NCBI GenBank assembly: GCA_964057225.1
Contig: OZ059898.1
Coordinates: 14,136,001 to 14,200,000, forward strand
Direction: 5' to 3'
DNA length: 64,000 bases
Source: Auanema rhodensis
Taxonomy: Eukaryota > Animalia > Nematoda
How positions within the stretch are numbered: position 1 is the first letter of the stretch; every line of letters begins with the position of its first letter. Position numbers and translations under genes: made by a program. Below, piece after piece: positions 1-20,807 of the stretch. Under the pieces are notes generated by a model that was not told the DNA's origin, did no database searches, and worked only from the letters and a program-made list of their open reading frames with translations.

Positions 1-211
1 TTACACCACGAACGCTACAATAGGTTGTGAACTATTAGATTAGATGAGTTGACACATCTTTGACTTCATTGATAATTACGAATGAAAAGCAGTAACATAG
101 TTCTTTAAACGTTTCACGTGAAAAGTTAGAAAATGGACAAGCTAAAGTACTTTCAAAATCTTTGCAACATATTGCAAAACGTCAAATCATTCAGCAAAAA
201 TGAAAAATGTT

Positions 212-283
212 TGCGTTCGGGGGGAATCGAACCCCCGTCGAATGCTTGGAAGGCATCCATGCTGACCATTACACCACGAACGC
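212..283 (-). tRNA. tRNA-Gly(TCC)
   Basis: Minus strand GCGTTCGTGGTGTAATGGTCAGCATGGATGCCTTCCAAGCATTCGACGGGGGTTCGATTCCCCCCGAACGCA; cloverleaf, anticodon TCC, A box TGGTGTAATGG, B box GGTTCGATTCC, T5 terminator runs just downstream. Confidence 0.97.
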
Positions 284-479
284 TACAATAGGTTGTGAAC
301 TATTAGATTAGATGAGTTGACACATCTTTGACTTCATTGATAATTACGAATGAAAAGCAGTAACATAGTTCTTTAAACGTTTCACGTGAAAAGTTAGAAA
401 ATGGACAAGCTAAAGTACTTTCAAAATCTTTGCAACATATTGCAAAACGTCAAATCATTCAGCAAAAATGAAAAATGTT

Positions 480-551
480 TGCGTTCGGGGGGAATCGAAC
501 CCCCGTCGAATGCTTGGAAGGCATCCATGCTGACCATTACACCACGAACGC
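480..551 (-). tRNA. tRNA-Gly(TCC)
   Basis: Identical array copy. Confidence 0.97.
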
Positions 552-744
552 TACAATAGGTTGTGAACTATTAGATTAGATGAGTTGACACATCTTTGAC
601 TTCATTGATAATTACGAATGAAAAGCAGAAACATATTTTTTTCAAACGTTTCACATCAAAAATTCAAAAATGGACAAGCTCAAGTACTTTCAAAATCTTT
701 GCAACATATTGCAATCAAATCATTCACAAAAAATGAAAAATGTT

Positions 745-816
745 TGCGTTCGGGGGGAATCGAACCCCCGTCGAATGCTTGGAAGGCATCCATGCTGACC
801 ATTACACCACGAACGC
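745..816 (-). tRNA. tRNA-Gly(TCC)
   Basis: Identical array copy. Confidence 0.97.
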
Positions 817-1009
817 TACGATGGCTCTTGAACTATTAGATTAGATGAGTTGACACATCTTTGACTTCATTGATAATTACGAATGAAAAGCAGAAACATA
901 TTTTTTTCAAACGTTTCACATCAAAAATTCAAAAATGGACAAGCTCAAGTATTTTCAAAATCTTTGCAACATATTGCAATCAAATCATTCACAAAAAATG
1001 AAAAATGTA

Positions 1010-1081
1010 TGCGTTCGGGGGGAATCGAACCCCCGTCGAATGCTTGGAAGGCATCCATGCTGACCATTACACCACGAACGC
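1010..1081 (-). tRNA. tRNA-Gly(TCC)
   Basis: Identical array copy. Confidence 0.97.
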
Positions 1082-1278
1082 TACGATGGCTCTTGAACTA
1101 TTAGATTAGATGAGTTGACACATCTTTGACTTCATATATAATTACGAATGAAAAGCAGAAACATATTTTTTTCAAACGTTTCACATCAAAAATTCAAAAA
1201 TGGACAAGCTCAAGTACTTTCAAAATCTTTGCAACATATTGCAAAACGTCAAACCATTCTTAAAAAATGAAAAATGTA

Positions 1279-1350
1279 TGCGTTCGGGGGGAATCGAACC
1301 CCCGTCGAATGCTTGGAAGGCATCCATGCTGACCATTACACCACGAACGC
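1279..1350 (-). tRNA. tRNA-Gly(TCC)
   Basis: Identical array copy. Confidence 0.97.
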
Positions 1351-1547
1351 TACAATAGGTTGTGAACTATTAGATTAGATGAGTTGACACATCTTTGACT
1401 TCATATATAATTACGAATGAAAAGCAGAAACATATTTTTTTCAAACGTTTCACATCAAAAATTCAAAAATGGACAAGCTCAAGTACTTTCAAAATCTTTG
1501 CAACATATTGCAAAACGTCAAACCATTCTTAAAAAATGAAAAATGTA

Positions 1548-1619
1548 TGCGTTCGGGGGGAATCGAACCCCCGTCGAATGCTTGGAAGGCATCCATGCTG
1601 ACCATTACACCACGAACGC
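1548..1619 (-). tRNA. tRNA-Gly(TCC)
   Basis: Identical array copy. Confidence 0.97.
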
Positions 1620-1811
1620 TACAATAGGTTGTGAACTATTAGATTAGATGAGTTGACACATCTTTGACTTCATTGATAATTACGAATGAAAAGCAGTAAC
1701 ATAGTTCTTTAAACGTTTCACGTGAAAAGTTAGAAAATGGACAAGCTAAAGTACTTTCAAAATCTTTGCAACATATTGCAATCAAATCATTCACAAAAAA
1801 TGAAAAATGTT

Positions 1812-1883
1812 TGCGTTCGGGGGGAATCGAACCCCCGTCGAATGCTTGGAAGGCATCCATGCTGACCATTACACCACGAACGC
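1812..1883 (-). tRNA. tRNA-Gly(TCC)
   Basis: Identical array copy. Confidence 0.97.
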
Positions 1884-2075
1884 TACAATACGTTGTGAAC
1901 TATTAGATTAGATGAGTTGACACATCTTTGACTTCATTGATAATTACGAATGAAAAGCAGTAACATAGTTCTTTAAACGTTTCACGTGAAAAGTTAGAAA
2001 ATGGACAAGCTAAAGTACTTTCAAAATCTTTGCAACATATTGCAATCAAATCATTCACAAAAAATGAAAAATGTT

Positions 2076-2147
2076 TGCGTTCGGGGGGAATCGAACCCCC
2101 GTCGAATGCTTGGAAGGCATCCATGCTGACCATTACACCACGAACGC
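2076..2147 (-). tRNA. tRNA-Gly(TCC)
   Basis: Identical array copy. Confidence 0.97.
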
Positions 2148-2339
2148 TACAATACGTTGTGAACTATTAGATTAGATGAGTTGACACATCTTTGACTTCA
2201 TTGATAATTACGAATGAAAAGCAGTAACATAGTTCTTTAAACGTTTCACGTGAAAAGTTAGAAAATGGACAAGCTAAAGTACTTTCAAAATCTTTGCAAC
2301 ATATTGCAATCAAATCATTCACAAAAAATGAAAAATGTT

Positions 2340-2411
2340 TGCGTTCGGGGGGAATCGAACCCCCGTCGAATGCTTGGAAGGCATCCATGCTGACCATTAC
2401 ACCACGAACGC
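2340..2411 (-). tRNA. tRNA-Gly(TCC)
   Basis: Identical array copy. Confidence 0.97.
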
Positions 2412-2603
2412 TACAATACGTTGTGAACTATTAGATTAGATGAGTTGACACATCTTTGACTTCATTGATAATTACGAATGAAAAGCAGTAACATAGTTCT
2501 TTAAACGTTTCACGTGAAAAGTTAGAAAATGGACAAGCTAAAGTACTTTCAAAATCTTTGCAACATATTGCAATCAAATCATTCACAAAAAATGAAAAAT
2601 GTT

Positions 2604-2675
2604 TGCGTTCGGGGGGAATCGAACCCCCGTCGAATGCTTGGAAGGCATCCATGCTGACCATTACACCACGAACGC
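2604..2675 (-). tRNA. tRNA-Gly(TCC)
   Basis: Identical array copy. Confidence 0.97.
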
Positions 2676-2868
2676 TACAATAGGTTGTGAACTATTAGAT
2701 TAGATGAGTTGACACATCTTTGACTTCATTGATAATTACGAATGAAAAGCAGAAACATATTTTTTTCAAACGTTTCACATCAAAAATTCAAAAATGGACA
2801 AGCTCAAGTACTTTCAAAATCTTTGCAACATATTGCAATCAAATCATTCACAAAAAATGAAAAATGTT

Positions 2869-2940
2869 TGCGTTCGGGGGGAATCGAACCCCCGTCGAAT
2901 GCTTGGAAGGCATCCATGCTGACCATTACACCACGAACGC
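2869..2940 (-). tRNA. tRNA-Gly(TCC)
   Basis: Identical array copy. Confidence 0.97.
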
Positions 2941-3133
2941 TACAATAGGTTGTGAACTATTAGATTAGATGAGTTGACACATCTTTGATTTCATTGATAA
3001 TTACGAATGAAAAGCAGTAACATATTTTTTTCAAACGTTTCACATCAAAAAATCAAAAATGGACAAGCTCAAGTATTTTCAAAATCTTTGCAACATATTG
3101 CAATCAAATCATTCACAAAAAATGAAAAATGTA

Positions 3134-3205
3134 TGCGTTCGGGGGGAATCGAACCCCCGTCGAATGCTTGGAAGGCATCCATGCTGACCATTACACCACG
3201 AACGC
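3134..3205 (-). tRNA. tRNA-Gly(TCC)
   Basis: Identical array copy. Confidence 0.97.
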
Positions 3206-3401
3206 TACAATAGGTTGTGAACTATTAGATTAGATGAGTTGACACATCTTTGACTTCATTGATAATTACGAATGAAAAGCAGTAACATAGTTCTTTAAAC
3301 GTTTCACGTGAAAAGTTAGAAAATGGACAAGCTAAAGTACTTTCAAAATCTTTGCAACATATTGCAAAACGTCAAATCATTCAGCAAAAATGAAAAATGT
3401 T

Positions 3402-3473
3402 TGCGTTCGGGGGGAATCGAACCCCCGTCGAATGCTTGGAAGGCATCCATGCTGACCATTACACCACGAACGC
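3402..3473 (-). tRNA. tRNA-Gly(TCC)
   Basis: Identical array copy. Confidence 0.97.
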
Positions 3474-3666
3474 TACAATAGGTTGTGAACTATTAGATTA
3501 GATGAGTTGACACATCTTTGACTTCATTGATAATTACGAATGAAAAGCAGAAACATATTTTTTTCAAACGTTTCACATCAAAAATTCAAAAATGGACAAG
3601 CTCAAGTACTTTCAAAATCTTTGCAACATATTGCAATCAAATCATTCACAAAAAATGAAAAATGTT

Positions 3667-3738
3667 TGCGTTCGGGGGGAATCGAACCCCCGTCGAATGC
3701 TTGGAAGGCATCCATGCTGACCATTACACCACGAACGC
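3667..3738 (-). tRNA. tRNA-Gly(TCC)
   Basis: Identical array copy. Confidence 0.97.
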
Positions 3739-3931
3739 TACGATGGCTCTTGAACTATTAGATTAGATGAGTTGACACATCTTTGACTTCATTGATAATT
3801 ACGAATGAAAAGCAGAAACATATTTTTTTCAAACGTTTCACATCAAAAATTCAAAAATGGACAAGCTCAAGTATTTTCAAAATCTTTGCAACATATTGCA
3901 ATCAAATCATTCACAAAAAATGAAAAATGTA

Positions 3932-4003
3932 TGCGTTCGGGGGGAATCGAACCCCCGTCGAATGCTTGGAAGGCATCCATGCTGACCATTACACCACGAA
4001 CGC
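3932..4003 (-). tRNA. tRNA-Gly(TCC)
   Basis: Identical array copy. Confidence 0.97.
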
Positions 4004-4200
4004 TACGATGGCTCTTGAACTATTAGATTAGATGAGTTGACACATCTTTGACTTCATATATAATTACGAATGAAAAGCAGAAACATATTTTTTTCAAACG
4101 TTTCACATCAAAAATTCAAAAATGGACAAGCTCAAGTACTTTCAAAATCTTTGCAACATATTGCAAAACGTCAAACCATTCTTAAAAAATGAAAAATGTA

Positions 4201-4272
4201 TGCGTTCGGGGGGAATCGAACCCCCGTCGAATGCTTGGAAGGCATCCATGCTGACCATTACACCACGAACGC
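4201..4272 (-). tRNA. tRNA-Gly(TCC)
   Basis: Identical array copy. Confidence 0.97.
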
Positions 4273-4469
4273 TACAATAGGTTGTGAACTATTAGATTAG
4301 ATGAGTTGACACATCTTTGACTTCATATATAATTACGAATGAAAAGCAGAAACATATTTTTTTCAAACGTTTCACATCAAAAATTCAAAAATGGACAAGC
4401 TCAAGTACTTTCAAAATCTTTGCAACATATTGCAAAACGTCAAACCATTCTTAAAAAATGAAAAATGTA

Positions 4470-4541
4470 TGCGTTCGGGGGGAATCGAACCCCCGTCGAA
4501 TGCTTGGAAGGCATCCATGCTGACCATTACACCACGAACGC
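4470..4541 (-). tRNA. tRNA-Gly(TCC)
   Basis: Identical array copy. Confidence 0.97.
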
Positions 4542-4733
4542 TACAATAGGTTGTGAACTATTAGATTAGATGAGTTGACACATCTTTGACTTCATTGATA
4601 ATTACGAATGAAAAGCAGTAACATAGTTCTTTAAACGTTTCACGTGAAAAGTTAGAAAATGGACAAGCTAAAGTACTTTCAAAATCTTTGCAACATATTG
4701 CAATCAAATCATTCACAAAAAATGAAAAATGTT

Positions 4734-4805
4734 TGCGTTCGGGGGGAATCGAACCCCCGTCGAATGCTTGGAAGGCATCCATGCTGACCATTACACCACG
4801 AACGC
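4734..4805 (-). tRNA. tRNA-Gly(TCC)
   Basis: Identical array copy. Confidence 0.97.
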
Positions 4806-4997
4806 TACAATACGTTGTGAACTATTAGATTAGATGAGTTGACACATCTTTGACTTCATTGATAATTACGAATGAAAAGCAGTAACATAGTTCTTTAAAC
4901 GTTTCACGTGAAAAGTTAGAAAATGGACAAGCTAAAGTACTTTCAAAATCTTTGCAACATATTGCAATCAAATCATTCACAAAAAATGAAAAATGTT

Positions 4998-5069
4998 TGC
5001 GTTCGGGGGGAATCGAACCCCCGTCGAATGCTTGGAAGGCATCCATGCTGACCATTACACCACGAACGC
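4998..5069 (-). tRNA. tRNA-Gly(TCC)
   Basis: Identical array copy. Confidence 0.97.
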
Positions 5070-5257
5070 TACAATACGTTGTGAACTATTAGATTAGATG
5101 AGTTGACACATCTTTGACTTCATTGATAATTACGAATGAAAAGCAGTAACATAGTTCTTTAAACGTTTCACGTGAAAAGTTAGAAAATGGACAAGCTAAA
5201 GTACTTTCAAAATCTTTGCAACATATTGCAATCAAATCATTCACAAAAAATGAAAAA

Positions 5258-5417
5258 TGACCTGTCTGGCAGCTAGGCCGTGTGGGATGTTAAGAGGGAG
5301 GAGCTAATCTGCAAAAAGTATATGTAAGATTATTAAATGAGATTATTTAATGCGTTTGAAACAAAACGAGTGGGTTAACTTCTCATAACATTTTAAAATG
5401 TTTTGATATTCCATGTC
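5258..5417. repeat. 160-bp direct repeat, copy 1 (LTR or LTR fragment)
   Basis: tgacctgtctggcagc...gatattccatgtc is identical to 8399-8558; lies 17 nt past the ORF stop codon. Confidence 0.9.
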
Positions 5418-5434
5418 TATTAGTATAGAGCATG

Positions 5435-7201
5435 TTAGGATTGCTGTCCTGACAATAGCAATTTTCGACTGTTTCGGCTGGTCATATGAGATCTTATATG
5501 AGATGGGAGACATTGAGTGATCATACGCCAAACGGAAAAAAGGGTGTATTGTGCAATATGAACAAATTTTTTAGAACAAATTCGGATGACTATGATGCTT
5601 AAAAGAATGCTAAATAGAATGAGCCATATGATGAGTGCGGTCGCCGAGAGTGCTGCGTATGGGAAACAAGATGGGTTGTGGAGTAGTTCAAGACAGAACA
5701 GACATTGAATCATATCGCAAAACGGAGTTGCTGGACAATCCAGTTGATGCAATGCAAATGTGTCATTTTTATCGATAATATGTCGTGAGATGAATGTGTG
5801 GTCATGCAATACAACATGAGCCGGAAATACTATGGTGAAGTTGGGAGTATTTGGGTTGTACTCTACACATGTTTCTCGGGCACAAACTCGGATGGGATGT
5901 CCAGTACCGCAGTTTGATATGCCTACTCCTCCTTTGATGCAAGAGAACTGGCAGATGTTGGTTGCGGACATTGTATTGACGAGAATACCCAGTATCATGG
6001 CTATGAAAAAATGTGTGTAACTGGGGAGACGTTGTCGTTTTCGAGGTTGTGGTTCATTTTCACCTTCATCATCTGCAATGGTGATCACTTCGATGTCATC
6101 ATCATCGTTGATAGTGATAACGTTTGGGTCTATCACGTTTTCAGTTGTATTGGGTCCGGTCGATGTGCTGGTTTCCACAACGGTGGATACTTCGTTATCG
6201 AGTAAAATGACCTCTGGAGTTTCTTTAAACGTGACAGTTTTGTCTGATTTGTGTGGGGACTGCGTATGACTGTTTTCCGTATGATGCTCGTTGTCGGAAG
6301 GAATTTCAAGGGGAATCAGGCGATTGATGGGTCTAATTAGTTTGTGTCCATCAGATGTACGGACTTCTGCAACTCTCACAGATTCCGTGTTCTGTATGCT
6401 TGTTATTAAACCCATTTTCCACTGGTTTCGTTTCGTATTGTCATCTGACATTAGCACTACTGTGCCTACTTTTGGTGTAGCTGTGGAGAAATGTCCTTGC
6501 TTGTGATCCAACATGTGTGTTGCTCGAAGGGCGACGACATATTCATTATGCCATCGTTGCCAAATTTTGTCAAGTGTTTTCTGAATGTTGTTTAAATGTT
6601 TTTGTATTCCAGAAAAGAAACTCATCTCTAAATTTTTTCTGGAGTATTTCATTCTGTTCATGTCATTTTGCAATGTTGTTGAGTCATGTACTGTAGAGTC
6701 AAATGAACTCTGATAGTCATCGAGTTCATCTCGGCGAAGTTGGATAAGTTGAGTATATTCCTCAACTTCGCCTGTGTTCACAATGAGATCTCTCTCATCA
6801 CAATAGTCCAAAATGCCCTTGATCAGTTTTGCAACTGTGGGCGGATGTTCTTCGCCAATGTCTTTGGTGACAAGTTGGTCGATTTCATGAGCTTTCATGG
6901 TCTTATGGGCTTGAGGGTGTTTGGCCAACATCCTTTTATAGCTACCTTGGTATAATTCCAACCAAGTTGCTGGGTAGTCCACATGGGTGCGTTCCTCGAG
7001 CACCACTCGATGTTCGTCTAACTGATCTCGTAGTGATCGGAAGACGTCCCCAACCGGGATGGCTTTATAATATATACGCATCAAGCTAGGCTTGTGCGTA
7101 TGTATGAACTCTCGACATCTGTCAATGTCATCAACCGGGGGGAAGATGAATGCTTGATGGTACGGGAGGATGTCCTCCTTCACCGTGTTGAACAACTTCA
7201 A
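5435..7201 (-). CDS. BEL/Pao polyprotein deletion derivative: Gag-like N-terminus + integrase C-terminal (DUF5641-like) domain + truncated phlebovirus-like envelope glycoprotein
   Basis: 588-aa ORF. IWQRWHNEYVVALR..PKVGTVVL..KRNQWKMGLI..VRVAEVRT..LIRPINRLIPLEI is the typical BEL integrase tail. It is followed by a hydrophobic signal segment, CPATPFCDMIQCLFCLELLHNPSC and a TM helix. No protease, RT, RNase H or DDE core motifs. The frame stays open upstream to 7291; the nearest ATG (7295) is 1 nt out of frame. Confidence 0.85.
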   Translation of the reverse strand: MKLFNTVKEDILPYHQAFIFPPVDDIDRCREFIHTHKPSLMRIYYKAIPVGDVFRSLRDQLDEHRVVLEERTHVDYPATWLELYQGSYKRMLAKHPQAHKTMKAHEIDQLVTKDIGEEHPPTVAKLIKGILDYCDERDLIVNTGEVEEYTQLIQLRRDELDDYQSSFDSTVHDSTTLQNDMNRMKYSRKNLEMSFFSGIQKHLNNIQKTLDKIWQRWHNEYVVALRATHMLDHKQGHFSTATPKVGTVVLMSDDNTKRNQWKMGLITSIQNTESVRVAEVRTSDGHKLIRPINRLIPLEIPSDNEHHTENSHTQSPHKSDKTVTFKETPEVILLDNEVSTVVETSTSTGPNTTENVIDPNVITINDDDDIEVITIADDEGENEPQPRKRQRLPSYTHFFIAMILGILVNTMSATNICQFSCIKGGVGISNCGTGHPIRVCARETCVEYNPNTPNFTIVFPAHVVLHDHTFISRHIIDKNDTFALHQLDCPATPFCDMIQCLFCLELLHNPSCFPYAALSATALIIWLILFSILLSIIVIRICSKKFVHIAQYTLFSVWRMITQCLPSHIRSHMTSRNSRKLLLSGQQS

Positions 7202-8398
7202 CGCGTGAGTTATATTTCTTTTTAAACAACTTAACTGTCTTGCTAAGGCAGTCAGGTTACGAGTTACGAGTTTCCGATGGAGAAGAGGGACTCATAATCA
7301 TTTTGTTTGAAGAGAAATATTATTGTTCAAGTTAATTTTGTGTTTAATCTAGCTAATTTGTGGATTGATTATTAAAATCAATTGAATTAAAGTCCGAATA
7401 TAATAGCTGTCGATAGAAGGAATAACAATATATAATATAAATAGGAATATAAATAAACAAGTAATATAAGCAAATAAGATAAGCAAATAGTTCACTATTA
7501 GAAGGTACAATGAATATTTAGTTGAATATTTGTTAACAGTTTTTTCTTTGGAGAGTTATACTGTTAGTTTTTTCGTGTAGTTGTTACTGTTTCGTTAAAT
7601 TACTTGTGTGGAATCTTTTGTAAAAAAATGTATGTTTTATCTTTTGAATATATTTTTTTTTTTTTTTGTTAGCTAAGTTAGTATATTTTTAATTTTTTTT
7701 TTTTTTTTTTTTAAAATGGAGATTGTTCAGGCAAAGATAATTCAATAAGTATCTTTCTCTGGTTAAAAAAGAAAAATTGGATGATTCACTAGATGAGAGA
7801 ACAATTCAAGTTGAGAGATTACTGTAGGAAATAGAGAGAAAAAATTGAGTTTCCCAAAATCGATCAAAAAATGTGAGCAAACTAGCTTGGATGAATTCAG
7901 TAAAGTTTTCTGAGTAATTTGATACTAAATATGCTGTTGTTTTTTATCAAAAAATATAATATCAATATTAATATTAATTGGTTGAAATATAATAAGGATA
8001 TCCAAAAAATATTCAAAATATTATTGTTTGATTGATCAGAAAGTATGTGTATGAAAAGGATGAGTGATTTGAGACAAAAGATTTATTTCTGGACAGATGA
8101 ACAAAGGAAATTGTATAAGATAACAGATGTGAATGAAATATAAACAATATAAAATGTGAAATAATAAAATTAAAATAAAACAAATTGAAATTATAAAATA
8201 ACTTACCAACTTAATGTAAATGTATAATTGATACCAGAGAGTATCAATTCAAATTCAATAAGCGGTTAAAGTGTTAATGCGAACAAATGAAAACTAACTT
8301 GATTCTCCTTGAGGATCCTTGATGTCGATTGTCCTTGTCTGGTGAATAGGTTAGCAGATGGCGTCGGGTGCTGTGGCTGGTTGTAGCGGCGGAATGAA

Positions 8399-8559
8399 TG
8401 ACCTGTCTGGCAGCTAGGCCGTGTGGGATGTTAAGAGGGAGGAGCTAATCTGCAAAAAGTATATGTAAGATTATTAAATGAGATTATTTAATGCGTTTGA
8501 AACAAAACGAGTGGGTTAACTTCTCATAACATTTTAAAATGTTTTGATATTCCATGTCA
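8399..8559. repeat. 160-bp direct repeat, copy 2 (LTR or LTR fragment; TGAC...GTCA ends)
   Basis: Identical to 5258-5417; contains a minus-strand TTTTTGCAG splice acceptor at 8450-8458. Confidence 0.9.
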
Positions 8560-9922
8560 TTCGATGATGACCTAGATAATGTGTGAGAGATGTTTGCGTG
8601 GTGCTAATGGCGCCGCACCAGGTCAATGAACAGATGGCAACATCTTTTGTCTTTTTTCGCGTATCTTGTCAACATATTTGCTAAAATCGACTTTTTGGTG
8701 CAAAATGTTGGAAATATCTCTTAACCTTTGCTGAGATTTATATTTTATGCTTTAACATGCGTAGGATGATAATTCGTAGCTCTTTCGTGTCTTATCATTA
8801 TCTCATCTATGTAGGATGGGATATTATGATGTTTTGTGATTTTTCACAGAAATTTTCATCTGCGTAGGATTTTAACAATATAGTTAATGTATTTTGTCCT
8901 ATAGAACGTGGGTGATGATCTTATATAAGATAAAATATATAAATTTTATGAATTTCATGATTTGGACTCTGACCTTTCTCATTGACCCGTTGGTCGTTAC
9001 ATATGACTCATATGGTTGGAAACAATAGATTTACAGACAATGGATGAATAAAGAAATTTAAAAACTATAAAACAAGCCGTAAATAGTAAAAACTCGGAAC
9101 TCTTTCGCATTTTTATATAAACAACACCTACCGAGAGTGCAAGGGTACCAAACAAACATCAACAAGTAGGTCAACAGACGTTCCTTGTTGATAGGCTCCT
9201 TCCACACATGTTCACAAATAATCGTTGATCTCTAAGATACTGACTCCTTTACAGATGAGGAAACAGACAGCATTACTCATATAGCAAGGAGACATTGGTC
9301 TAAGATGCCTTTTAGTCACCTATTCAATTGATTCACAATTGTTAAAATAACTTTTGCACTCGAAGTCTATCAAAACTGTTTGCAATGATTATTGAAAGTT
9401 ACGTAAAATATAAAAGATATAAAAAGGTCTCAAAATCAAAGAATAAATGAATAAATAGCGTTTTTAGACGGTAGCTTTGCTAATGCGTAATTCATATCAT
9501 TGTTTCTCACTGTCCTCAGTCAGTAAAAATAAGATCGCCATAAAATGTGTTTGTTGGTACTTTGTCTGCATTTTTCTCGTACTCTCGCATATTCTTCCTA
9601 GGAAAATACTGTGAAACATAATAAGGGGTGATCAATCCCAGCTGAGTCACTGCCGGCAAGTTAAAGGAAGTAGCCATTGGGTAATCCAATAGAGTTTATA
9701 TAGCGAACAACCCACTATGTTACTTTCTGTAATCATGTGGTACAAAAATATGGTATCAACCAAAATTTTAAATAATGTTTAATTATCACTGATATCTAGA
9801 CAATATTTAACAACCAATTATGTCATACTGACATACGATTCCTTTAGAGTATTTAGATCAGTGAACTTATACTGTAAAGGACATCCAACGAGTCACTATT
9901 AACGAGCAGACTGGCTTGAAGA

Positions 9923-10044
9923 AAAAAAAAGAAAAAAGATAAAGTAGCGCAATAGAAAGGTCATAGAGTAGAAAGTGATGCCGATGCACCATTTTCTACT
10001 CTATGACCTTTCTATTGCGCTACTTTATCTTTTTTCTTTTTTTT
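9923..10044. repeat. Perfect 52-bp inverted repeat with an 18-nt loop containing a tRNA-Gly(GCC) primer-binding-site-like 12-mer
   Basis: Arm 9923-9974 is the exact reverse complement of 9993-10044; loop gtgatGCCGATGCACCAt. Confidence 0.95.
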
Positions 10045-10117
10045 CATCGGTGGTTCAGTGGTAGAATGCTCGCCTGCCACGCGGGCGACCCGGGTTCGAT
10101 TCCCGGCCGATGCACCA
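10044..10117 (+). tRNA. tRNA-Gly(GCC) with encoded 3' CCA and a G1>T change
   Basis: tCATCGGTGGTTCAGTGGTAGAATGCTCGCCTGCCACGCGGGCGACCCGGGTTCGATTCCCGGCCGATGCA-CCA-TTTT; anticodon GCC at 10076-10078; intact A and B boxes. Confidence 0.93.
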
Positions 10118-10253
10118 TTTTGAAGATAGAGGGCTCTTCAAATAGCCTCCCAGGTTCACACTTTCTATTCTATGCCCTGTTAACGTAAAATACTATTAGA
10201 GGAAGAAAGATTCATTCATATGCCATTCAGATATACATAATACAGAATATAAG

Positions 10254-10390
10254 GACTAGAAGATATATAATAAGACTAGATAAAATACATAGAAGACTAG
10301 AGTGAATGTAATAAGACTAGATATACATCACTAATGAGACTAGAGATAGTCTTACTAAAGGACAAGGATAAAACGGTGGTTCAGACTAGA
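10254..10390 (+). repeat. Six phased GACTAGA motifs
   Basis: Copies start at 10254, 10274, 10295, 10315, 10338 and 10384. Confidence 0.75.
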
Positions 10391-10532
10391 TGAGTCATAA
10401 GATAAAGACAGCAACGAGGAGAGAGAAAAGCGACCGTCCGCGACGGTGGTATAAAAACAGAGTGCCCGTGAATCTCATCAGCCAACGTGATGAGATTGCA
10501 TCGATTGAATGATGGATAATCGCATTCGCGAT

Positions 10533-10585
10533 ACCCCCGTCGAATGCTTGGAAGGCATCCATGCTGACCATTACACCACGAACGC
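10533..10585 (-). pseudogene. tRNA-Gly(TCC) truncated in the T-loop by the insertion
   Basis: Lacks the 3' 19 nt TCGATTCCCCCCGAACGCA. Confidence 0.9.
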
Positions 10586-10778
10586 TACAATAGGTTGTGA
10601 ACTATTAGATTAGATGAGTTGACACATCTTTGACTTCATTGATAATTACGAATGAAAAGCAGAAACATATTTTTTTCAAACGTTTCACATCAAAAATTCA
10701 AAAATGGACAAGCTCAAGTACTTTCAAAATCTTTGCAACATATTGCAATCAAATCATTCACAAAAAATGAAAAATGTT

Positions 10779-10850
10779 TGCGTTCGGGGGGAATCGAACC
10801 CCCGTCGAATGCTTGGAAGGCATCCATGCTGACCATTACACCACGAACGC
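10779..10850 (-). tRNA. tRNA-Gly(TCC)
   Basis: Identical array copy. Confidence 0.97.
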
Positions 10851-11042
10851 TACGATGGGTTGTGAACTATTAGATTAGATGAGTTGACACATCTTTGACT
10901 TCATTGATAATTACGAATGAAAAGCAGTAACATAGTTCTTTAAACGTTTCACGTGAAAAGTTAGAAAATGGACAAGCTAAAGTACTTTCAAAATCTTTGC
11001 AACATATTGCATTCAAATCGTTCACAAAAAATGAAAAATGTA

Positions 11043-11114
11043 TGCGTTCGGGGGGAATCGAACCCCCGTCGAATGCTTGGAAGGCATCCATGCTGACCAT
11101 TACACCACGAACGC
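11043..11114 (-). tRNA. tRNA-Gly(TCC)
   Basis: Identical array copy. Confidence 0.97.
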
Positions 11115-11310
11115 TACAATAGGTTGTGAACTATTAGATTAGATGAGTTGACACATCTTTGACTTCATTGATAATTACGAATGAAAAGCAGTAACATAGT
11201 TCTTTAAACGTTTCACGTGAAAAGTTAGAAAATGGACAAGCTAAAGTACTTTCAAAATCTTTGCAACATATTGCAAAACGTCAAATCATTCAGCAAAAAT
11301 GAAAAATGTT

Positions 11311-11382
11311 TGCGTTCGGGGGGAATCGAACCCCCGTCGAATGCTTGGAAGGCATCCATGCTGACCATTACACCACGAACGC
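11311..11382 (-). tRNA. tRNA-Gly(TCC)
   Basis: Identical array copy. Confidence 0.97.
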
Positions 11383-11578
11383 TACAATAGGTTTTGAACT
11401 ATTAGATTAGATGAGTTGACACATCTTTGACTGCATTGATAATTACGAATGAAAAGCAGTAACATAGTTCTTTAAACGTTTCACGTGAAAAGTTAGAAAA
11501 TGGACAAGCTAAAGTACTTTCAAAATCTTTGCAACATATTGCAAAACGTCAAATCATTCAGCAAAAATGAAAAATGTG

Positions 11579-11650
11579 TGCGTTCGGGGGGAATCGAACC
11601 CCCGTCGAATGCTTGGAAGGCATCCATGCTGACCATTACACCACGAACGC
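11579..11650 (-). tRNA. tRNA-Gly(TCC)
   Basis: Identical array copy. Confidence 0.97.
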
Positions 11651-11844
11651 TACAATAGGTTGTGAACTATTAGATTAGATGAGTTGACACATCTTTGACT
11701 TCATTGATAATTACAGAATGAAAAGCAGAAACATATTTTTTTCAAACGTTTCACATCAAAAATTCAAAAATGGACAAGCTCAAGTATTTTCAAAATCTTT
11801 GCAACATATTGCAATCAAATCGTTCAGAAAAAATGAAAAATGTG

Positions 11845-11916
11845 TGCGTTCGGGGGGAATCGAACCCCCGTCGAATGCTTGGAAGGCATCCATGCTGACC
11901 ATTACACCACGAACGC
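11845..11916 (-). tRNA. tRNA-Gly(TCC)
   Basis: Identical array copy. Confidence 0.97.
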
Positions 11917-12112
11917 TACAATAGGTTGTGAACTATTAGACTAGACGAGTTGACACATCTTTGACTTCATTGATAATTACGAATGAAAAGCAGTAACATA
12001 GTTCTTTAAACGTTTCACGTGAAAAGTTAGAAAATGGACAAGCTAAAGTACTTTCAAAATCTTTGCAACATATTGCAAAACGTCAAATCATTCACAAAAA
12101 ATGAAAAATGTT

Positions 12113-12184
12113 TGCGTTCGGGGGGAATCGAACCCCCGTCGAATGCTTGGAAGGCATCCATGCTGACCATTACACCACGAACGC
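12113..12184 (-). tRNA. tRNA-Gly(TCC)
   Basis: Identical array copy. Confidence 0.97.
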
Positions 12185-12382
12185 TACAATAGGTTGTGAA
12201 CTATTAGATTAGATGAGTTGACACATCTTTGACTTCATTGATAATTACAGAATGAAAAGCAGAAACATATTTTTTTCAAACGTTTCACATCAAAAATTCA
12301 AAAATGGACAAGCTCAAGTATTTTCAAAATCTTTGCAACATATTGCAAAACGTCAAATCATTCACAAAAAATGAAAAATGTT

Positions 12383-12454
12383 TGCGTTCGGGGGGAATCG
12401 AACCCCCGTCGAATGCTTGGAAGGCATCCATGCTGACCATTACACCACGAACGC
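12383..12454 (-). tRNA. tRNA-Gly(TCC)
   Basis: Identical array copy. Confidence 0.97.
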
Positions 12455-12651
12455 TACGATGGCTCTTGAACTATTAGATTAGATGAGTTGACACATCTTT
12501 GACTTCATTGATAATTAAGAATGAAAAGCAGTAACATATTTTTTTCAAACGTTTCACATCAAAAATTCAAAAATGGACAAGCTCAAGTATTTTCAAAATC
12601 TTTGCAACATATTGCAAAACGTCAAATCATTCACAAAAAATGAAAAATGTT

Positions 12652-12723
12652 TGCGTTCGGGGGGAATCGAACCCCCGTCGAATGCTTGGAAGGCATCCAT
12701 GCTGACCATTACACCACGAACGC
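12652..12723 (-). tRNA. tRNA-Gly(TCC)
   Basis: Identical array copy. Confidence 0.97.
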
Positions 12724-12916
12724 TACAATAGGTTGTGAACTATTAGATTAGATGAGTTGACACATCTTTGACTTCATTGATAATTAAGAATGAAAAGCAG
12801 TAACATATTTTTTTCAAACGTTTCACATCAAAAAATCAAAAATGGACAAGCTCAAGTATTTTCAAAATCTTTGCAACATATTGCAATCAAATCATTCACA
12901 AAAAATGAAAAATGTT

Positions 12917-12988
12917 TGCGTTCGGGGGGAATCGAACCCCCGTCGAATGCTTGGAAGGCATCCATGCTGACCATTACACCACGAACGC
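12917..12988 (-). tRNA. tRNA-Gly(TCC)
   Basis: Identical array copy. Confidence 0.97.
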
Positions 12989-13184
12989 TACGATGGCTCT
13001 TGAACTATTTGATTAGATGAGTTGACACATCTTTGACTTCATATATAATTACGAATGAAAAGCAGAAACATATTTTTTTAAACGTTTCACATCAAAAAAT
13101 CAAAAATGGACAAGCTCAAGTATTTTCAAAATCTTTGCAACATATTGCAAAACGTCAAATCATTCACAAAAAATGAAAAATGTT

Positions 13185-13256
13185 TGCGTTCGGGGGGAAT
13201 CGAACCCCCGTCGAATGCTTGGAAGGCATCCATGCTGACCATTACACCACGAACGC
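13185..13256 (-). tRNA. tRNA-Gly(TCC)
   Basis: Identical array copy. Confidence 0.97.
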
Positions 13257-13452
13257 TACGATGGCTCTTGAACTATTTGATTAGATGAGTTGACACATCT
13301 TTGACTTCATATATAATTACGAATGAAAAGCAGAAACATATTTTTTTAAACGTTTCACATCAAAAAATCAAAAATGGACAAGCTCAAGTATTTTCAAAAT
13401 CTTTGCAACATATTGCAAAACGTCAAATCATTCAGCAAAAATGAAAAATGTA

Positions 13453-16253: not shown

Positions 16254-18095
16254 CATTATTCTTCAGAATGAATGAGTACATTGTGTAATTGGAGATAGCA
16301 GGTCTAAACTAATTATTATTCGGATTTTCTTTAAACAGGACTTAGCTGCTAAACATGAGTAACAGAATGTGATTATCCGAAAATAAATACAAATAGCAAC
16401 ATACGATCTTGAAATATTTGGTTTGGATGTGAAAAGGAGGAAAGTGGATGAAAACCAGTATAAAGAAAGTGGAAAAGATCCAATGTCCGACCTTCTAATA
16501 AGAAGGTGAAACCAAGAGCTTCCTAAATTTTTTCTAGGAAATACCAGCAAAGAAACAAAATATTTAAGAATGTATTCACAAGAAATCTATTGCAATTTCA
16601 TATGATGAAAATACAAGAAAATATTCTTCTACGTAATTGAAATAGAAATTTACCTCTGACATATCATGCCAATTGAGAATCTCTATGTTGCTTAATGTTT
16701 ATGAAAAGAAGAAACGTAGAGATTTGATTCAAGAAATCTTGTCAAAGGTTATGATAAAGCTTATGATAATCTTGTTTTTCCCTTAATTAATCGGTTAACG
16801 TCAATTCTATCCTTGATCATTCAATCATTTTTATCTCTTATAACCAGAATGAGTGTGACAACATGTTTAACATAGCATGTTTAAACCTTTAATCATTTTG
16901 CAAATTTGTTCTAAAGATATTGGCTCCTTTTTGTATTTCTCCATTTTCAGGGCTTCGTGTAATAGCTCCAAATTAACTTCTGAACACAATATTTACAACT
17001 TAACAGATTAATGAATAAGGCTTTCCCACTATTTAACAGAAATACTTAAAATAATATAGTTGATTACTGTTGGACTGCGATCACTTCAAATTAAATAAAA
17101 GTTTAAATTAATAAAATAATGTTCTTAAAGATCATATATTTTTCTTCCTGTCCACTTGTTGCATCCTAGGTAGGCTACACATTAAACAATTTAATGATAT
17201 ATAGACAATAAATTGTTTCTGACAATACAACATGCATTCTACAAAACATTATTTAGAACGCATTAAATAGGAGTTAGGATTTATTTTGAATATCATAACA
17301 TAACTTTGTAATAAAACCTTTCTGGCTAGATCATTAAAATGCTTTAAATGATAAGATGTGAGAATTGGAATGATTAATGAACACAACTCAAATGTGTATG
17401 GCATAGTTTCTGCAACTATCGAATGAATCTTATTGTTTATAAAGTTTTATTGAAATATATTCTTTGAAAACTAATACATGTACATGTTTCATTGCTGGTT
17501 AATTAAAAAATCTTCTCTTAATTTTTCCGAAACCTTAAACTGTTTATATAAATTAAAAACACATACATATATGTTTTCTTTCCAATTTACTTTCATTATA
17601 AAATTATATACATAAGAATATATGCATATCTTGATGATACTGATCTCGTGATCAACCGGTCAGTTAAACCACAAAAATAAAAATGGCGTCGGCCAATTAC
17701 GCGCGTGACGTGAAAAACTTTACAACTCGAATTCCACAGATTTATTTGAAATGAACAAAGAAACTAATATTTTTTTCAATAGAAAATATAATATTTTAAG
17801 TATATTTGATAAGGGTTTTATTTTAAAACCGAGGCCGTATATCAAGCTACGAACAGCTCAAGACAGGCAACAGTATAAGCTTTTTATGAATAGTTTTTAA
17901 TCGGAAGCGTCATTTCGAAAATATAAAAAAGTTATTGTAAGTGAAAAACTGGGTTTTTTGAATGTTAATCGTTTTTTCCATCTACTAATATGAACCATTA
18001 AAGTTTTAGAGAAACATGAGTACGTAAACTGGAGAACATAATGTTACATTTTGAATGAACAAGCATTTTTGCGTATTATATTTCAAATTCAAACT
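16254..18095 (+). repeat. Segmental duplication, copy 1
   Basis: Blocks 16254-16679, 16728-17015 and 17326-18095 match 19094-19519, 19748-20035 and 20038-20807. Confidence 0.92.
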
Positions 18096-19093: not shown

Positions 19094-20807
19094 CATTATT
19101 CTTCAGAATGAATGAGTACATTGTGTAATTGGAGATAGCAGGTCTAAACTAATTATTATTCGGATTTTCTTTAAACAGGACTTAGCTGCTAAACATGAGT
19201 AACAGAATGTGATTATCCGAAAATAAATACAAATAGCAACATACGATCTTGAAATATTTGGTTTGGATGTGAAAAGGAGGAAAGTGGATGAAAACCAGTA
19301 TAAAGAAAGTGGAAAAGATCCAATGTCCGACCTTCTAATAAGAAGGTGAAACCAAGAGCTTCCTAAATTTTTTCTAGGAAATACCAGCAAAGAAACAAAA
19401 TATTTAAGAATGTATTCACAAGAAATCTATTGCAATTTCATATGATGAAAATACAAGAAAATATTCTTCTACGTAATTGAAATAGAAATTTACCTCTGAC
19501 ATATCATGCCAATTGAGAACAAACATACATATTTGATCAGTGATCTCGTAATGGAATTCGATTTGAACCACGCCCATTCATTGATACCTGCTATATTCAG
19601 TGCAACTTAAAAATTTAGCTCCATGATGCGAAATTTGAGTTCGAAAATTTTAATAATTTATAGGTTTAGGTAATATCAGAGTAATATTTAACAATAAGGT
19701 ATATAACCATAAAGTGAGATTTATGGAAAAGAAATGTACAGAGTTGGTTCAAGAAATCTTGTCAAAGGTTATGATAAAGCTTATGATAATCTTGTTTTTC
19801 CCTTAATTAATCGGTTAACGTCAATTCTATCCTTGATCATTCAATCATTTTTATCTCTTATAACCAGAATGAGTGTGACAACATGTTTAACATAGCATGT
19901 TTAAACCTTTAATCATTTTGCAAATTTGTTCTAAAGATATTGGCTCCTTTTTGTATTTCTCCATTTTCAGGGCTTCGTGTAATAGCTCCAAATTAACTTC
20001 TGAACACAATATTTACAACTTAACAGATTAATGAAAACTAGATCATTAAAATGCTTTAAATGATAAGATGTGAGAATTGGAATGATTAATGAACACAACT
20101 CAAATGTGTATGGCATAGTTTCTGCAACTATCGAATGAATCTTATTGTTTATAAAGTTTTATTGAAATATATTCTTTGAAAACTAATACATGTACATGTT
20201 TCATTGCTGGTTAATTAAAAAATCTTCTCTTAATTTTTCCGAAACCTTAAACTGTTTATATAAATTAAAAACACATACATATATGTTTTCTTTCCAATTT
20301 ACTTTCATTATAAAATTATATACATAAGAATATATGCATATCTTGATGATACTGATCTCGTGATCAACCGGTCAGTTAAACCACAAAAATAAAAATGGCG
20401 TCGGCCAATTACGCGCGTGACGTGAAAAACTTTACAACTCGAATTCCACAGATTTATTTGAAATGAACAAAGAAACTAATATTTTTTTCAATAGAAAATA
20501 TAATATTTTAAGTATATTTGATAAGGGTTTTATTTTAAAACCGAGGCCGTATATCAAGCTACGAACAGCTCAAGACAGGCAACAGTATAAGCTTTTTATG
20601 AATAGTTTTTAATCGGAAGCGTCATTTCGAAAATATAAAAAAGTTATTGTAAGTGAAAAACTGGGTTTTTTGAATGTTAATCGTTTTTTCCATCTACTAA
20701 TATGAACCATTAAAGTTTTAGAGAAACATGAGTACGTAAACTGGAGAACATAATGTTACATTTTGAATGAACAAGCATTTTTGCGTATTATATTTCAAAT
20801 TCAAACT
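19094..20807 (+). repeat. Segmental duplication, copy 2
   Basis: See copy 1; offsets are 2840, 3020 and 2712 for the three blocks. Confidence 0.92.

What the first reader, a model, noticed from the sequence alone, without database searches (positions are those of the whole stretch)
9923..10143. Candidate self-contained priming module: primer-binding site in the loop of a perfect 52-bp hairpin, fused to a CCA-encoding tRNA-Gly(GCC) gene
Seen: arms 9923-9974 and 9993-10044 pair perfectly. The loop holds GCCGATGCACCA, the last 12 nt of mature tRNA-Gly(GCC); with the following TTTT it forms a 16-nt direct repeat (9980-9995 and 10106-10121). The right arm runs straight into a full tRNA-Gly(GCC) ending CCA-TTTT, followed by a small stem (tttgaaga-8 nt-tcttcaaa). 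On the minus strand, the same sense as the BEL ORF, both sites read TGGTGCATCGGC, a canonical primer-binding site. Known: eukaryotic tRNA genes do not normally encode CCA, so this copy looks reverse-transcribed from a mature tRNA; nematode BEL elements use tRNA-Gly primers, and I recall one Cer family reported to carry its own tRNA-Gly (to verify). Inference A: the element encodes its own primer on one strand and presents the matching site in a stem-loop on the other. Inference B: a plus-strand hairpin-tRNA transcript is cut by RNase P/Z to release a Dicer-length dsRNA, as in tRNA-linked viral miRNAs or mascRNA. The T1:C72 mismatch would likely impair aminoacylation, which fits a primer-only or processing-signal role.
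Basis: partly seen in the sequence, partly recalled or inferred. Interest (0 to 1): 0.88.

Follow-up and report, generated by a model that had tools for sequence, protein, structure and literature searches.

The report
Fossil of a botched retroelement reverse transcription
The hairpin, the doubled primer site and the CCA-tailed tRNA-Gly copy are real, but they look like the frozen by-product of one faulty reverse-transcription cycle of a defective nematode BEL-type retroelement, not a built-in priming device.

Summary

The anatomy fits a scar. Read on the + strand, the region is a minus-strand cDNA, in this order:
- leader copy, complement of the primer-binding site (PBS) and at least 1 nt of U5;
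- a 52-nt snap-back copy of that leader, joined through a TTT/AAA microhomology;
- the mature primer tRNA, positions 2-76 with CCA;
- TTTT and the complement of U5.

Normal second-strand transfer merges the two PBS copies. Here both survived, the primer tRNA was copied to its 5' end, and the PBS-bearing end folded back on itself.

The carrier is a defective composite. It has a truncated LTR, no gag, protease or RT, and only an integrase C-terminus fused to a phlebovirus-G1-like env piece. It sits in a tRNA-Gly(TCC) tandem array with a 22-bp deletion, no target-site duplication and microhomology at both joints.

In the element's RNA the PBS is mostly base-paired, not displayed. The tRNA lies on the opposite strand. 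T-runs rule out a Pol III hairpin-tRNA precursor.

Unchecked scan notes report other whole-tRNA PBS sites in this genome, which keeps a heritable reading alive.

The parts
9923..9974 (-). Left arm: original leader sequence just downstream of the PBS (element sense is the minus strand). It is contiguous with the rest of the leader at lower coordinates.
   Evidence: 52/52 complementary to 9993-10044. Colinear with GTGAT and the PBS complement. Its part 9958-9977 is complementary 18/20 to the U5 box 10159-10178.
9975..9995 (-). Hairpin centre: GTGAT (leader), PBS copy 2 (9980-9991, TGGTGCATCGGC on the minus strand) and TTTT (9992-9995), the complement of the AAAA that separates LTR end and PBS.
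   Evidence: T9992 is not templated by the left arm (G9975), so the cDNA ran at least 1 nt past the PBS. 9993-9995 TTT overlaps the arm, giving a 3-nt microhomology.
9993..10044 (+). Right arm: inverted (snap-back) copy of the left arm. It ends inside an A9/T8 homopolymer run.
   Evidence: The DNA fold of the nascent 3' end 9940-9995 pairs the terminal TTTT/ACCA with 9972-9977, the geometry needed to prime this copy. The fold is weak, -2.7 kcal/mol.
10045..10117 (+). Retro-copy of mature tRNA-Gly(GCC), positions 2-76 including CCA. Its last 12 nt (10106-10117) are PBS copy 1 on the minus strand.
   Evidence: ARAGORN, Rfam 57.7 bits, PBS count. G1 is inferred missing from acceptor-stem pairing with C72.
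10118..10142 (-). TTTT spacer (AAAA in element sense) and the terminal U5 hairpin TTTGAAGA-8 nt-TCTTCAAA.
   Evidence: The 'CA + AAA + TGG' spacing resembles 'CA + AAT + TGG' in the Haemonchus relative.
10122..10532 (-). LTR-like segment (R-U5 plus a short piece of U3), truncated at its 5' end with no TG start. It holds the U5 box 10159-10178, GACTAGA short repeats at 10240-10400, an 11-nt match to tRNA-Gly(GCC) nt 5-15 at 10373-10383, and a TATA-like TTTTTATACC near 10455.
   Evidence: No second copy in the window, so its LTR identity is inferred.
8559..9922 (-). Non-coding internal or leader region between the hairpin and the upstream 162-bp repeat.
   Evidence: No ORF longer than 59 aa and no Pfam or BEL protein similarity.
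8397..8558 (.). 162-bp repeat, copy 2, 100% identical to 5256-5417. Its nature is unexplained.
   Evidence: No PBS or PPT beside it.
5435..7291 (-). Truncated pol-env ORF: integrase C-terminal domain (DUF5641) fused to a phlebovirus-G1-like env N-terminal part.
   Evidence: DUF5641 E = 4e-15. Phlebovirus_G1 E = 0.016, below the Pfam cut-off. tblastn with the Haemonchus env ORF covers 6475-5600, E = 6e-21. 2369 BEL-type relatives in the library, the listed 150 at most 43% identical.
5256..5417 (.). 162-bp repeat, copy 1. Its first 4 nt (AATG) overlap the array sequence, forming the left junction of the insertion.
10533..10585 (-). Remnant of the interrupted tRNA-Gly(TCC) gene (positions 1-53). 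Positions 54-73 plus 2 nt, 22 bp in all, are missing and there is no target-site duplication.
   Evidence: Rfam gives a weak tRNA hit at 10521-10585, 33.3 bits.

Best explanation
The module is a scar of one aberrant reverse-transcription cycle of an env-bearing BEL/Pao-type element primed by tRNA-Gly(GCC). It was then fixed in the germline as part of a defective, rearranged cDNA inserted without integrase.

Proposed steps. The junction anatomy is shown; the enzymology is inferred.
1. Minus-strand DNA copied the leader, the 12-nt PBS and 1-4 nt of the AAAA at the U5 end (9923-9995, + strand).
2. Its free 3' end folded back through a TTT/AAA microhomology, helped by the small TGC-CGAT-GCA palindrome in the PBS. 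It was extended on itself for about 50 nt, making the right arm and burying the PBS complement.
3. Plus-strand strong-stop DNA did not stop about 18 nt into the primer. It copied the whole tRNA up to position 2.
4. PBS-to-PBS annealing was then impossible, so the two 3' ends were joined end to end inside a T8/A9 run. This leaves arm, tRNA(2-76)-CCA, TTTT and the complement of U5 in one strand.

Both PBS copies therefore persist: one templated by the genomic RNA and one by the tRNA. They form the 16-nt direct repeat. The product has no function as a priming device. Any transcript through it would carry a perfect 52-59-bp hairpin and could incidentally feed RNAi.
For: - Both tRNA boundaries coincide with mature-tRNA ends: position 2 abuts the arm, and CCA76 abuts the TTTT that mirrors the LTR-PBS spacer.
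- None of the 29 array tRNA genes encodes CCA.
- The left arm is colinear with leader-GTGAT-PBS complement. The right arm is flanked by non-native partners, so it is the copy.
- T9992 cannot be templated by the left arm, and 3 nt of microhomology follow it.
- The nascent 3' end folds into exactly the required primer-template geometry.
- The arm ends in a homopolymer run.
- The segment right of the tRNA behaves as U5. It has an 18/20 complement to the leader, reached by 0 of 400 shuffles. It also has a terminal hairpin and a CA+3 nt+TGG spacing like the Haemonchus BEL element, which has a plain 13-nt tRNA-Gly(GCC) PBS with no tRNA body or hairpin.
- The carrier is defective and non-canonically inserted. 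It has a 22-bp target deletion, no target-site duplication, 4-nt and 1-nt junction microhomologies, a truncated LTR, no matching 3' LTR, and no gag, protease or RT.
- Both aberrations are known reactions. Unmodified or m1A58-deficient primer tRNA is copied to its 5' end (PMC13191261). Minus-strand DNA 3' ends self-prime into dead-end hairpins (PMC6088434).
Against: - No read-level or copy-number evidence could be obtained.
- Unchecked scan notes report other elements in this genome whose PBS is a whole or near-whole CCA-tailed tRNA-Gly. The tRNA part could therefore be inherited rather than made in this cycle.
- The snap-back pairing is weak (-2.7 kcal/mol, z = -0.66).
- End-to-end joining could equally be host repair rather than RT.
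- The 162-bp repeats and the 1.4-kb non-coding stretch are not explained by the model.
Confidence: 0.6

Rival explanations
1. Same cDNA fragments, different joiner. A linear cDNA ending at the PBS and a strong-stop duplex carrying the fully copied tRNA were joined by host polymerase-theta end joining. The 52-nt inverted arm would then be a snap-back templated insertion made during repair of the break in the tRNA array.
For: - Microhomology is 3 nt at the arm and 4 and 1 nt at the array junctions. There is a 22-bp deletion and no target-site duplication.
- Pol theta dominates germline break repair in C. elegans and leaves microhomology plus templated, sometimes snap-back, insertions (titles and abstracts of PMC4490562, PMC5068794 and PMC4912351).
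- Retroelement cDNA is captured at breaks (PMC4516963, PMC11372161).
Against: - From memory, Pol theta templated insertions are usually much shorter than 52 nt.
- The fold-back sits exactly at the run-off end of minus-strand DNA, where RT self-priming is the documented reaction.
- Sequence alone cannot tell the two polymerases apart.
Confidence: 0.2
2. Heritable family feature. A BEL lineage carries a whole-tRNA complement as an extended PBS, and on the other strand a Pol III-transcribable primer copy. The layout would be propagated by retrotransposition.
For: - Unchecked notes report, elsewhere in the same genome, an entire CCA-tailed tRNA-Gly used as PBS, a near-complete tRNA 'ghost' and a 49-nt antisense tRNA copy.
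- An extended PBS would make read-through strong-stop DNA competent for transfer. HIV has a small-scale analogue.
- The stretch 9560-10530 is held by contigs of 11 DNA runs from 3 studies under 5 organism labels.
- The tRNA cloverleaf is intact and a T4 terminator follows it.
Against: - This copy cannot transpose: it has no matching 3' LTR and no gag, protease or RT.
- The tRNA is antisense to the element RNA.
- The host already has many tRNA-Gly(GCC) genes according to an unchecked scan note, so an extra copy gives no obvious benefit.
- The second PBS is sequestered in the hairpin.
- A 16-nt direct repeat flanking 110 nt should be lost quickly by template switching.
- No second copy exists in 64 kb.
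- The Haemonchus relative has the plain layout.
Confidence: 0.1
3. Small-RNA precursor. A plus-strand hairpin-tRNA transcript is cut by RNase P or Z to release a Dicer substrate.
For: There is a perfect 52-59-bp hairpin next to a tRNA fold. Possible RNA runs hold 0.10-0.21 of the sampled words of the stretch.
Against: - The order is hairpin then tRNA, the reverse of the tRNA-first units I recall from the literature (from memory).
- T4, T6 and T8 runs lie inside and at the end of the hairpin, and T4 follows CCA directly. A Pol III transcript therefore cannot contain both parts.
- No promoter evidence exists.
- An incidental siRNA yield from any read-through transcript remains possible, but that is a consequence and not a design.
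Confidence: 0.03
4. The tRNA is an ordinary chromosomal tRNA-Gly(GCC) gene next to which an element integrated. The CCA and the shared TTTT would be coincidence.
For: Scan notes say LTR elements of this genome integrate at fixed distances from tRNA-Gly genes. A T-run after a tRNA gene is normal.
Against: - G1 is missing and there is no native 5' flank, because the inverted arm abuts position 2.
- CCA is encoded, at odds of 1 in 64, and is absent from 29/29 array genes.
- The 3' flank carries an 18/20 complement to the element's leader.
- The whole unit lies inside an insertion that interrupts the array.
Confidence: 0.03
5. Assembly or sequencing fold-back artefact.
For: Palindromes are classic chimera sites, and read support could not be inspected.
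Against: - Eleven DNA runs from three studies hold 74-91% of the sampled 31-mers of 9560-10530.
- Long-read fold-back chimeras give kilobase-scale inversions, not a 52-bp arm joined precisely to a mature tRNA end.
- Every junction has a biochemical rationale.
Confidence: 0.04

Closest known systems
Read-through plus-strand strong-stop DNA (HIV-1 'P1' product, in which the primer tRNA is copied to its 5' end when m1A58 is absent)
   Same: A complete complement of the primer tRNA lies directly after U5 and the PBS, as described for unmodified tRNA in vitro and for TRMT6-mutant cells (PMC13191261).
   Different: Here it is fixed in an animal germline genome, in a BEL/Pao-type element primed by tRNA-Gly(GCC). 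In HIV only products stopping at m1A58, m5Um54 or psi55 are described as usable for the next step.
Self-priming of minus-strand DNA (HIV-1 cTAR fold-back, suppressed by nucleocapsid)
   Same: The 3' end of a run-off minus-strand DNA folds back and is extended on itself, giving a perfect hairpin (PMC6088434).
   Different: The fold-back is at the PBS end of the long minus strand, not at R of strong-stop DNA. The seed is 3 nt plus a small palindrome, not a structured hairpin. The product was rescued into chromosomal DNA.
Strong-stop-DNA model for the origin of tRNA-derived SINEs (Ohshima and Okada; cited from memory, not retrieved)
   Same: tRNA, CCA and the complement of U5 sit in one strand, which is the proposed progenitor structure.
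   Different: A T4 terminator follows CCA at once, so a Pol III transcript would not include U5. There is no sign of amplification.
Helenus / TRIMp3 non-autonomous LTR elements with tRNA-like LTRs (PMC10886601)
   Same: An LTR retroelement containing a tRNA-derived sequence with A and B boxes.
   Different: In Helenus the tRNA-like part lies inside both LTRs, serves as the element's promoter and has no CCA. It is not reported from nematodes. Here the tRNA is outside the LTR, antisense, and is a mature-tRNA copy at the PBS.
Polymerase-theta templated (snap-back) insertions in C. elegans
   Same: An inverted copy of adjacent sequence is joined through 1-4 nt of microhomology, and a deletion lies at the break.
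   Different: The length is 52 nt, it sits exactly at a reverse-transcription run-off end, and it is associated with a tRNA retro-copy.
Tf1-type self-priming retrotransposons (from memory)
   Same: The idea that an element supplies its own primer.
   Different: From memory, Tf1 primes with the 5' end of its own sense RNA folded onto the PBS. Here the sense RNA contains only the complement of the primer.

Membership tests
BEL/Pao LTR retroelement with tRNA-Gly(GCC) PBS | At least 10 nt complementary to the 3' end of the tRNA including CCA, 0-5 nt after the LTR's terminal CA | tested here: met
   TGGTGCATCGGC lies 3 nt after ...TTCA at 10106-10121. The layout matches Haemonchus L004...GCCA+AAT+TGGTGCATCGGCC.
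BEL/Pao LTR retroelement with tRNA-Gly(GCC) PBS | Two matching LTRs flanked by a target-site duplication | tested here: not met
   No second copy of 10122-10532 exists in the window. There is no duplication and 22 bp of target are deleted.
BEL/Pao LTR retroelement with tRNA-Gly(GCC) PBS | gag, protease, RT, RNase H and integrase of Pao type | tested here: not met
   Only DUF5641 plus an env G1-like piece are present. This is a defective derivative, not a full member.
Retro-copy of a mature tRNA | Encoded CCA, with copy ends at the mature 5' and 3' ends and no native flanks | tested here: met
   Positions 2-76, with the arm on one side and the U5 complement on the other. 0 of 29 neighbouring genes encode CCA.
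Retro-copy of a mature tRNA | Mismatches at RT-blocking modified bases relative to the genomic gene | not testable with these tools
   No genuine tRNA-Gly(GCC) gene is in the window. Places 10049-10085 may not be sent to search tools.
Self-priming retrotransposon (Tf1 type) | The sense transcript contains the primer sequence complementary to its own PBS | tested here: not met
   The tRNA sense strand is the + strand while the element sense is the minus strand. The minus strand carries only PBS-type copies.
tRNA-linked small-RNA precursors (MHV68 tRNA-miRNA, mascRNA type) | A tRNA-like fold at the 5' side drives Pol III, with the hairpin downstream and no T4+ run before the hairpin end | tested here: not met
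   The hairpin is upstream. T4, T6 and T8 runs lie at 9992-9995, 10030-10035 and 10037-10044, and T4 follows directly after CCA.
Helenus / TRIMp3 | A tRNA-like sequence inside both LTRs in a short non-autonomous element with a target-site duplication | tested here: not met
   The tRNA lies between the LTR-like segment and the leader, in a single copy, with no duplication.
Propagating repeat family carrying this module | Two or more unlinked copies with the same layout | not testable with these tools

The most novel reading that the evidence does not exclude
In this nematode, BEL elements primed by tRNA-Gly(GCC) routinely copy the whole primer, perhaps because A58 of this tRNA is poorly modified. 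Such products would be heritable. Whole-tRNA PBSs would then be a lineage trait, and CCA-tailed, Pol III-competent tRNA retro-copies would be seeded around the genome. The locus here would be one snapshot of a process that links retroelement priming to tRNA-gene or SINE birth, and incidentally creates perfect hairpins that could trigger RNAi against the family.
Probability: 0.15. Interest if true: 0.75.

Novelty: new variant of a known kind. Interest (0 to 1): 0.42.

Why it matters
The locus preserves, in chromosomal DNA, three things usually seen only in test-tube reverse transcription. The primer tRNA is still joined to strong-stop DNA, which is physical evidence that this BEL lineage is primed by tRNA-Gly(GCC). 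The primer was read through to its 5' end. The minus-strand end self-primed.

This makes a concrete hypothesis testable: the usual m1A58 stop is weak for this tRNA in this animal. If the unchecked reports of other whole-tRNA PBS sites in the genome hold, the locus points to a recurrent route from retroelement priming to new tRNA-like loci. As a single dead-end scar it is a curiosity, not a new mechanism.

Tried and rejected
There is therefore no read depth, junction or RNA evidence. After that call no letters of 10049-10085 were sent to any search tool.
- Exact look-up of ten start variants of the ORF found none in the collection. Non-ATG starts could only be sent with their literal first residue.
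- The search for homologous proteins gave one remote Haemonchus hit.
- The representative search gave 2369 BEL-type relatives, the listed 150 at most 43% identical (the strongest hits about 31-33%), so no close family member could be fetched.
- L005, a complete env-bearing BEL from a metagenome, has a different sequence directly after its 5' LTR (TGGCGCAACGAG...) and a plain layout. L006 lacks the 5' end.
- A viral-contig scan with a 28-mer from the arm found nothing.
- The literature string search for the PBS 12-mer returned only an unrelated Vibrio paper. Searches for BEL or Cer elements carrying their own tRNA found nothing relevant.
- The 162-bp repeats were considered as LTRs and rejected. 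No PBS or PPT lies beside them and they have no similarity to 10122-10532.

Full report
**Observation.**
- Arms 9923-9974 and 9993-10044 are complementary at 52 of 52 positions. With two mismatches the pairing continues inward to 59 nt around a 4-nt loop.
- The element-sense RNA folds at -88.6 kcal/mol, z = -18.3.
- GCCGATGCACCATTTT is repeated exactly at 9980-9995 and 10106-10121.
- On the minus strand the 12-mer TGGTGCATCGGC occurs twice in 64 kb, against 0.07 expected.
- A tRNA-Gly(GCC) is called at 10044-10117 by ARAGORN and at 57.7 bits by Rfam. It ends in CCA followed by TTTT.
- The 8-bp stem at 10119-10142 is exact.

Two details need correction. The PBS is not exposed, because 8 of its 12 bases are paired in the minimum-energy fold. 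The supposed T1 of the tRNA is the last base of the right arm.

**Context.**
- The window opens with a tandem array of tRNA-Gly(TCC) genes on the minus strand, period 264-269 bp, running to about 13.4 kb. None of its 29 genes encodes CCA.
- The array is interrupted from 5260 to 10532. Twenty-two array bases are missing (tRNA positions 54-73 plus 2 nt). There is no target-site duplication. The joints share 4 nt (AATG) on the left and 1 nt on the right.
- The insert holds a 162-bp perfect direct repeat at 5256-5417 and 8397-8558.
- It holds a minus-strand ORF with only DUF5641 and a phlebovirus-G1-like env piece.
- It holds about 2.5 kb without coding potential or similarity to BEL proteins.
- Its right end is the hairpin, the tRNA and a 411-bp LTR-like segment that has no partner in the window.

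**Which strand is what.** The ORF sets the element sense as the minus strand. In that sense 10122-10532 ends ...TCTTCA + AAA + TGGTGCATCGGC. A Haemonchus contortus env-bearing BEL element was fetched through the only sequence relative of the ORF. Its 5' LTR ends ...GCCA + AAT + TGGTGCATCGGCC, followed by ordinary leader, with no tRNA body and no hairpin. The segment 10159-10178 is complementary at 18 of 20 positions to the leader at 9958-9977, and no shuffle of 400 exceeded 15. Retroviruses have a U5-leader stem of this kind enclosing the PBS (from memory). I therefore read 10122 onward as U5 (inference) and the left arm as genuine leader.

**Reading the module as cDNA.** On the + strand the order is:
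- leader complement (left arm, then GTGAT);
- PBS complement;
- T, then TTT;
- inverted copy of the leader (right arm);
- tRNA positions 2-76 with CCA;
- TTTT;
- U5 complement.

The first block is what a completed minus-strand DNA looks like at its 3' end. T9992 cannot have been copied from the left arm, which has G at 9975. It matches the A that precedes the PBS in the element, so synthesis ran at least one base past the PBS. The next three T overlap the arm as microhomology. Folded as DNA, this 3' end adopts exactly the primer-template geometry needed to copy the left arm, though the fold is weak.

The last block is a tRNA primer still joined to minus-strand strong-stop DNA. For it to exist as double-stranded DNA, plus-strand strong-stop synthesis must have copied the whole tRNA instead of stopping after about 18 nt. 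The right arm ends inside a T8/A9 run and meets the tRNA at position 2, which is an end-to-end join.

In normal replication the two PBS copies anneal and merge. Here both survive as the 16-nt direct repeat, separated by the rest of the tRNA and the snap-back arm.

Both aberrations are documented reactions. Unmodified or m1A58-deficient primer is copied to its 5' end (PMC13191261). Minus-strand DNA ends self-prime into dead-end hairpins (PMC6088434).

**Who made the joints.** The sequence cannot separate RT template switching from host polymerase-theta end joining. Pol theta is a major driver of heritable genomic alterations in C. elegans, and in vitro it also extends DNA ends by snap-back templated synthesis in cis (titles and abstracts of PMC4490562 and PMC4912351). 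The non-integrase junctions with the array suggest that the whole composite was captured at a break, as is known for retroelement cDNA. I keep this as a variant rival.

**Why not a priming module.**
- The tRNA is antisense to the element RNA, so that RNA carries only the primer's complement.
- The downstream PBS is locked in a very stable hairpin.
- The copy lacks gag, protease, RT and a matching LTR.
- A direct repeat flanking 110 nt would be lost easily during reverse transcription.
- According to an unchecked scan note, the host already has many tRNA-Gly(GCC) genes.

**Why not a Pol III hairpin-tRNA precursor.** The order is the reverse of the tRNA-first units I recall from the literature, and T4, T6 and T8 runs lie within the hairpin. 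A perfect hairpin in any read-through transcript could still feed RNAi incidentally. This is untested.

**What could not be done.**
I worked beside those places afterwards and sent none of their letters to search tools.
- Eleven DNA runs from three studies, under five coded organism labels, hold 74-91% of the sampled words of 9560-10530. This argues against an assembly artefact but says nothing firm about copy number.
- No close protein relative is in the collections, so no sister copies could be fetched.
- Unchecked notes of this scan report other loci in the same genome with whole, near-whole or 49-nt tRNA-Gly complements at the PBS, and LTR boxes complementary to the tRNA D-arm. I saw one such 11-nt box at 10373-10383. 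If the notes are true, read-through is recurrent or heritable here, which is the basis of the novel case.

**An analogue elsewhere.** In them a CCA-tailed tRNA-Gly(GCC), positions 8-76, is preceded by a 21-nt complement of its own 3' end and flanked by imperfect inverted arms of about 40 nt. It looks like an inverted dimer of strong-stop DNAs in another eukaryote, so such fossils may be more common than noticed.

**Verdict.** The retro-copy and tRNA-Gly priming parts of the interpretation are supported. The functional-module and Dicer-precursor inferences are not. The best reading is a reverse-transcription and repair scar (0.6, plus 0.2 for the host-repair variant). It is a new variant of known aberrant products, of moderate interest.

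Noticed in passing
L002:3555-3720 (same sequence in L001:4180-4345): Two metagenome contigs carry a CCA-tailed tRNA-Gly(GCC), positions 8-76. It is preceded by a 21-nt complement of its own 3' end that stops just before position 55, and is flanked by imperfect inverted arms of about 40 nt. It looks like an inverted dimer of strong-stop DNAs in an unidentified eukaryote.
   Followed up: partly
window 5256-5417 and 8397-8558: A 162-bp direct repeat, 162/162 identical, brackets the pol-env ORF and 1.1 kb of AT-rich sequence. No PBS or PPT lies beside it. In minus sense it contains TTTTTGCAG, which resembles a nematode 3' splice site. Its origin is unexplained.
   Followed up: partly
window 5256-5259 and 10532-10533: The insertion replaces tRNA-Gly(TCC) positions 54-73 plus 2 nt. 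The joints share 4 nt and 1 nt of microhomology and there is no target-site duplication. The breakpoint sits exactly at the start of the T-loop.
   Followed up: partly
window 10373-10383: Eleven bases identical to tRNA-Gly(GCC) nt 5-15 lie inside the LTR-like segment, downstream of a TATA-like motif near 10455 (minus sense). This matches the 'anti-D-arm box' that other readers report in BEL LTRs of this genome.
   Followed up: no
window 10240-10400: GACTAGA-containing short repeats recur about every 20-40 nt in the LTR-like segment (family D1).
   Followed up: no
window 1-13450: A tandem array of at least 29 near-identical tRNA-Gly(TCC) genes, period 264-269 bp. Three variants of the first base after the discriminator occur: A in 19 genes, T in 8 and C in 2.
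   Followed up: partly
window 16266-16586 and 19106-19426: Two identical 107-codon stop-free stretches lie 2.8 kb apart on the minus strand, which suggests a local duplication or dispersed repeat.
   Followed up: no
window 21303-21848: A long stop-free stretch on the minus strand encodes a proline- and leucine-rich 'LSP' repeat, overlapped by an ORF on the opposite strand.
   Followed up: no
window 29208-29905: Cys-rich stop-free stretches (e.g. CEGKGTCKCGRCECK) look like EGF-type exons of an integrin beta-like gene.
   Followed up: no
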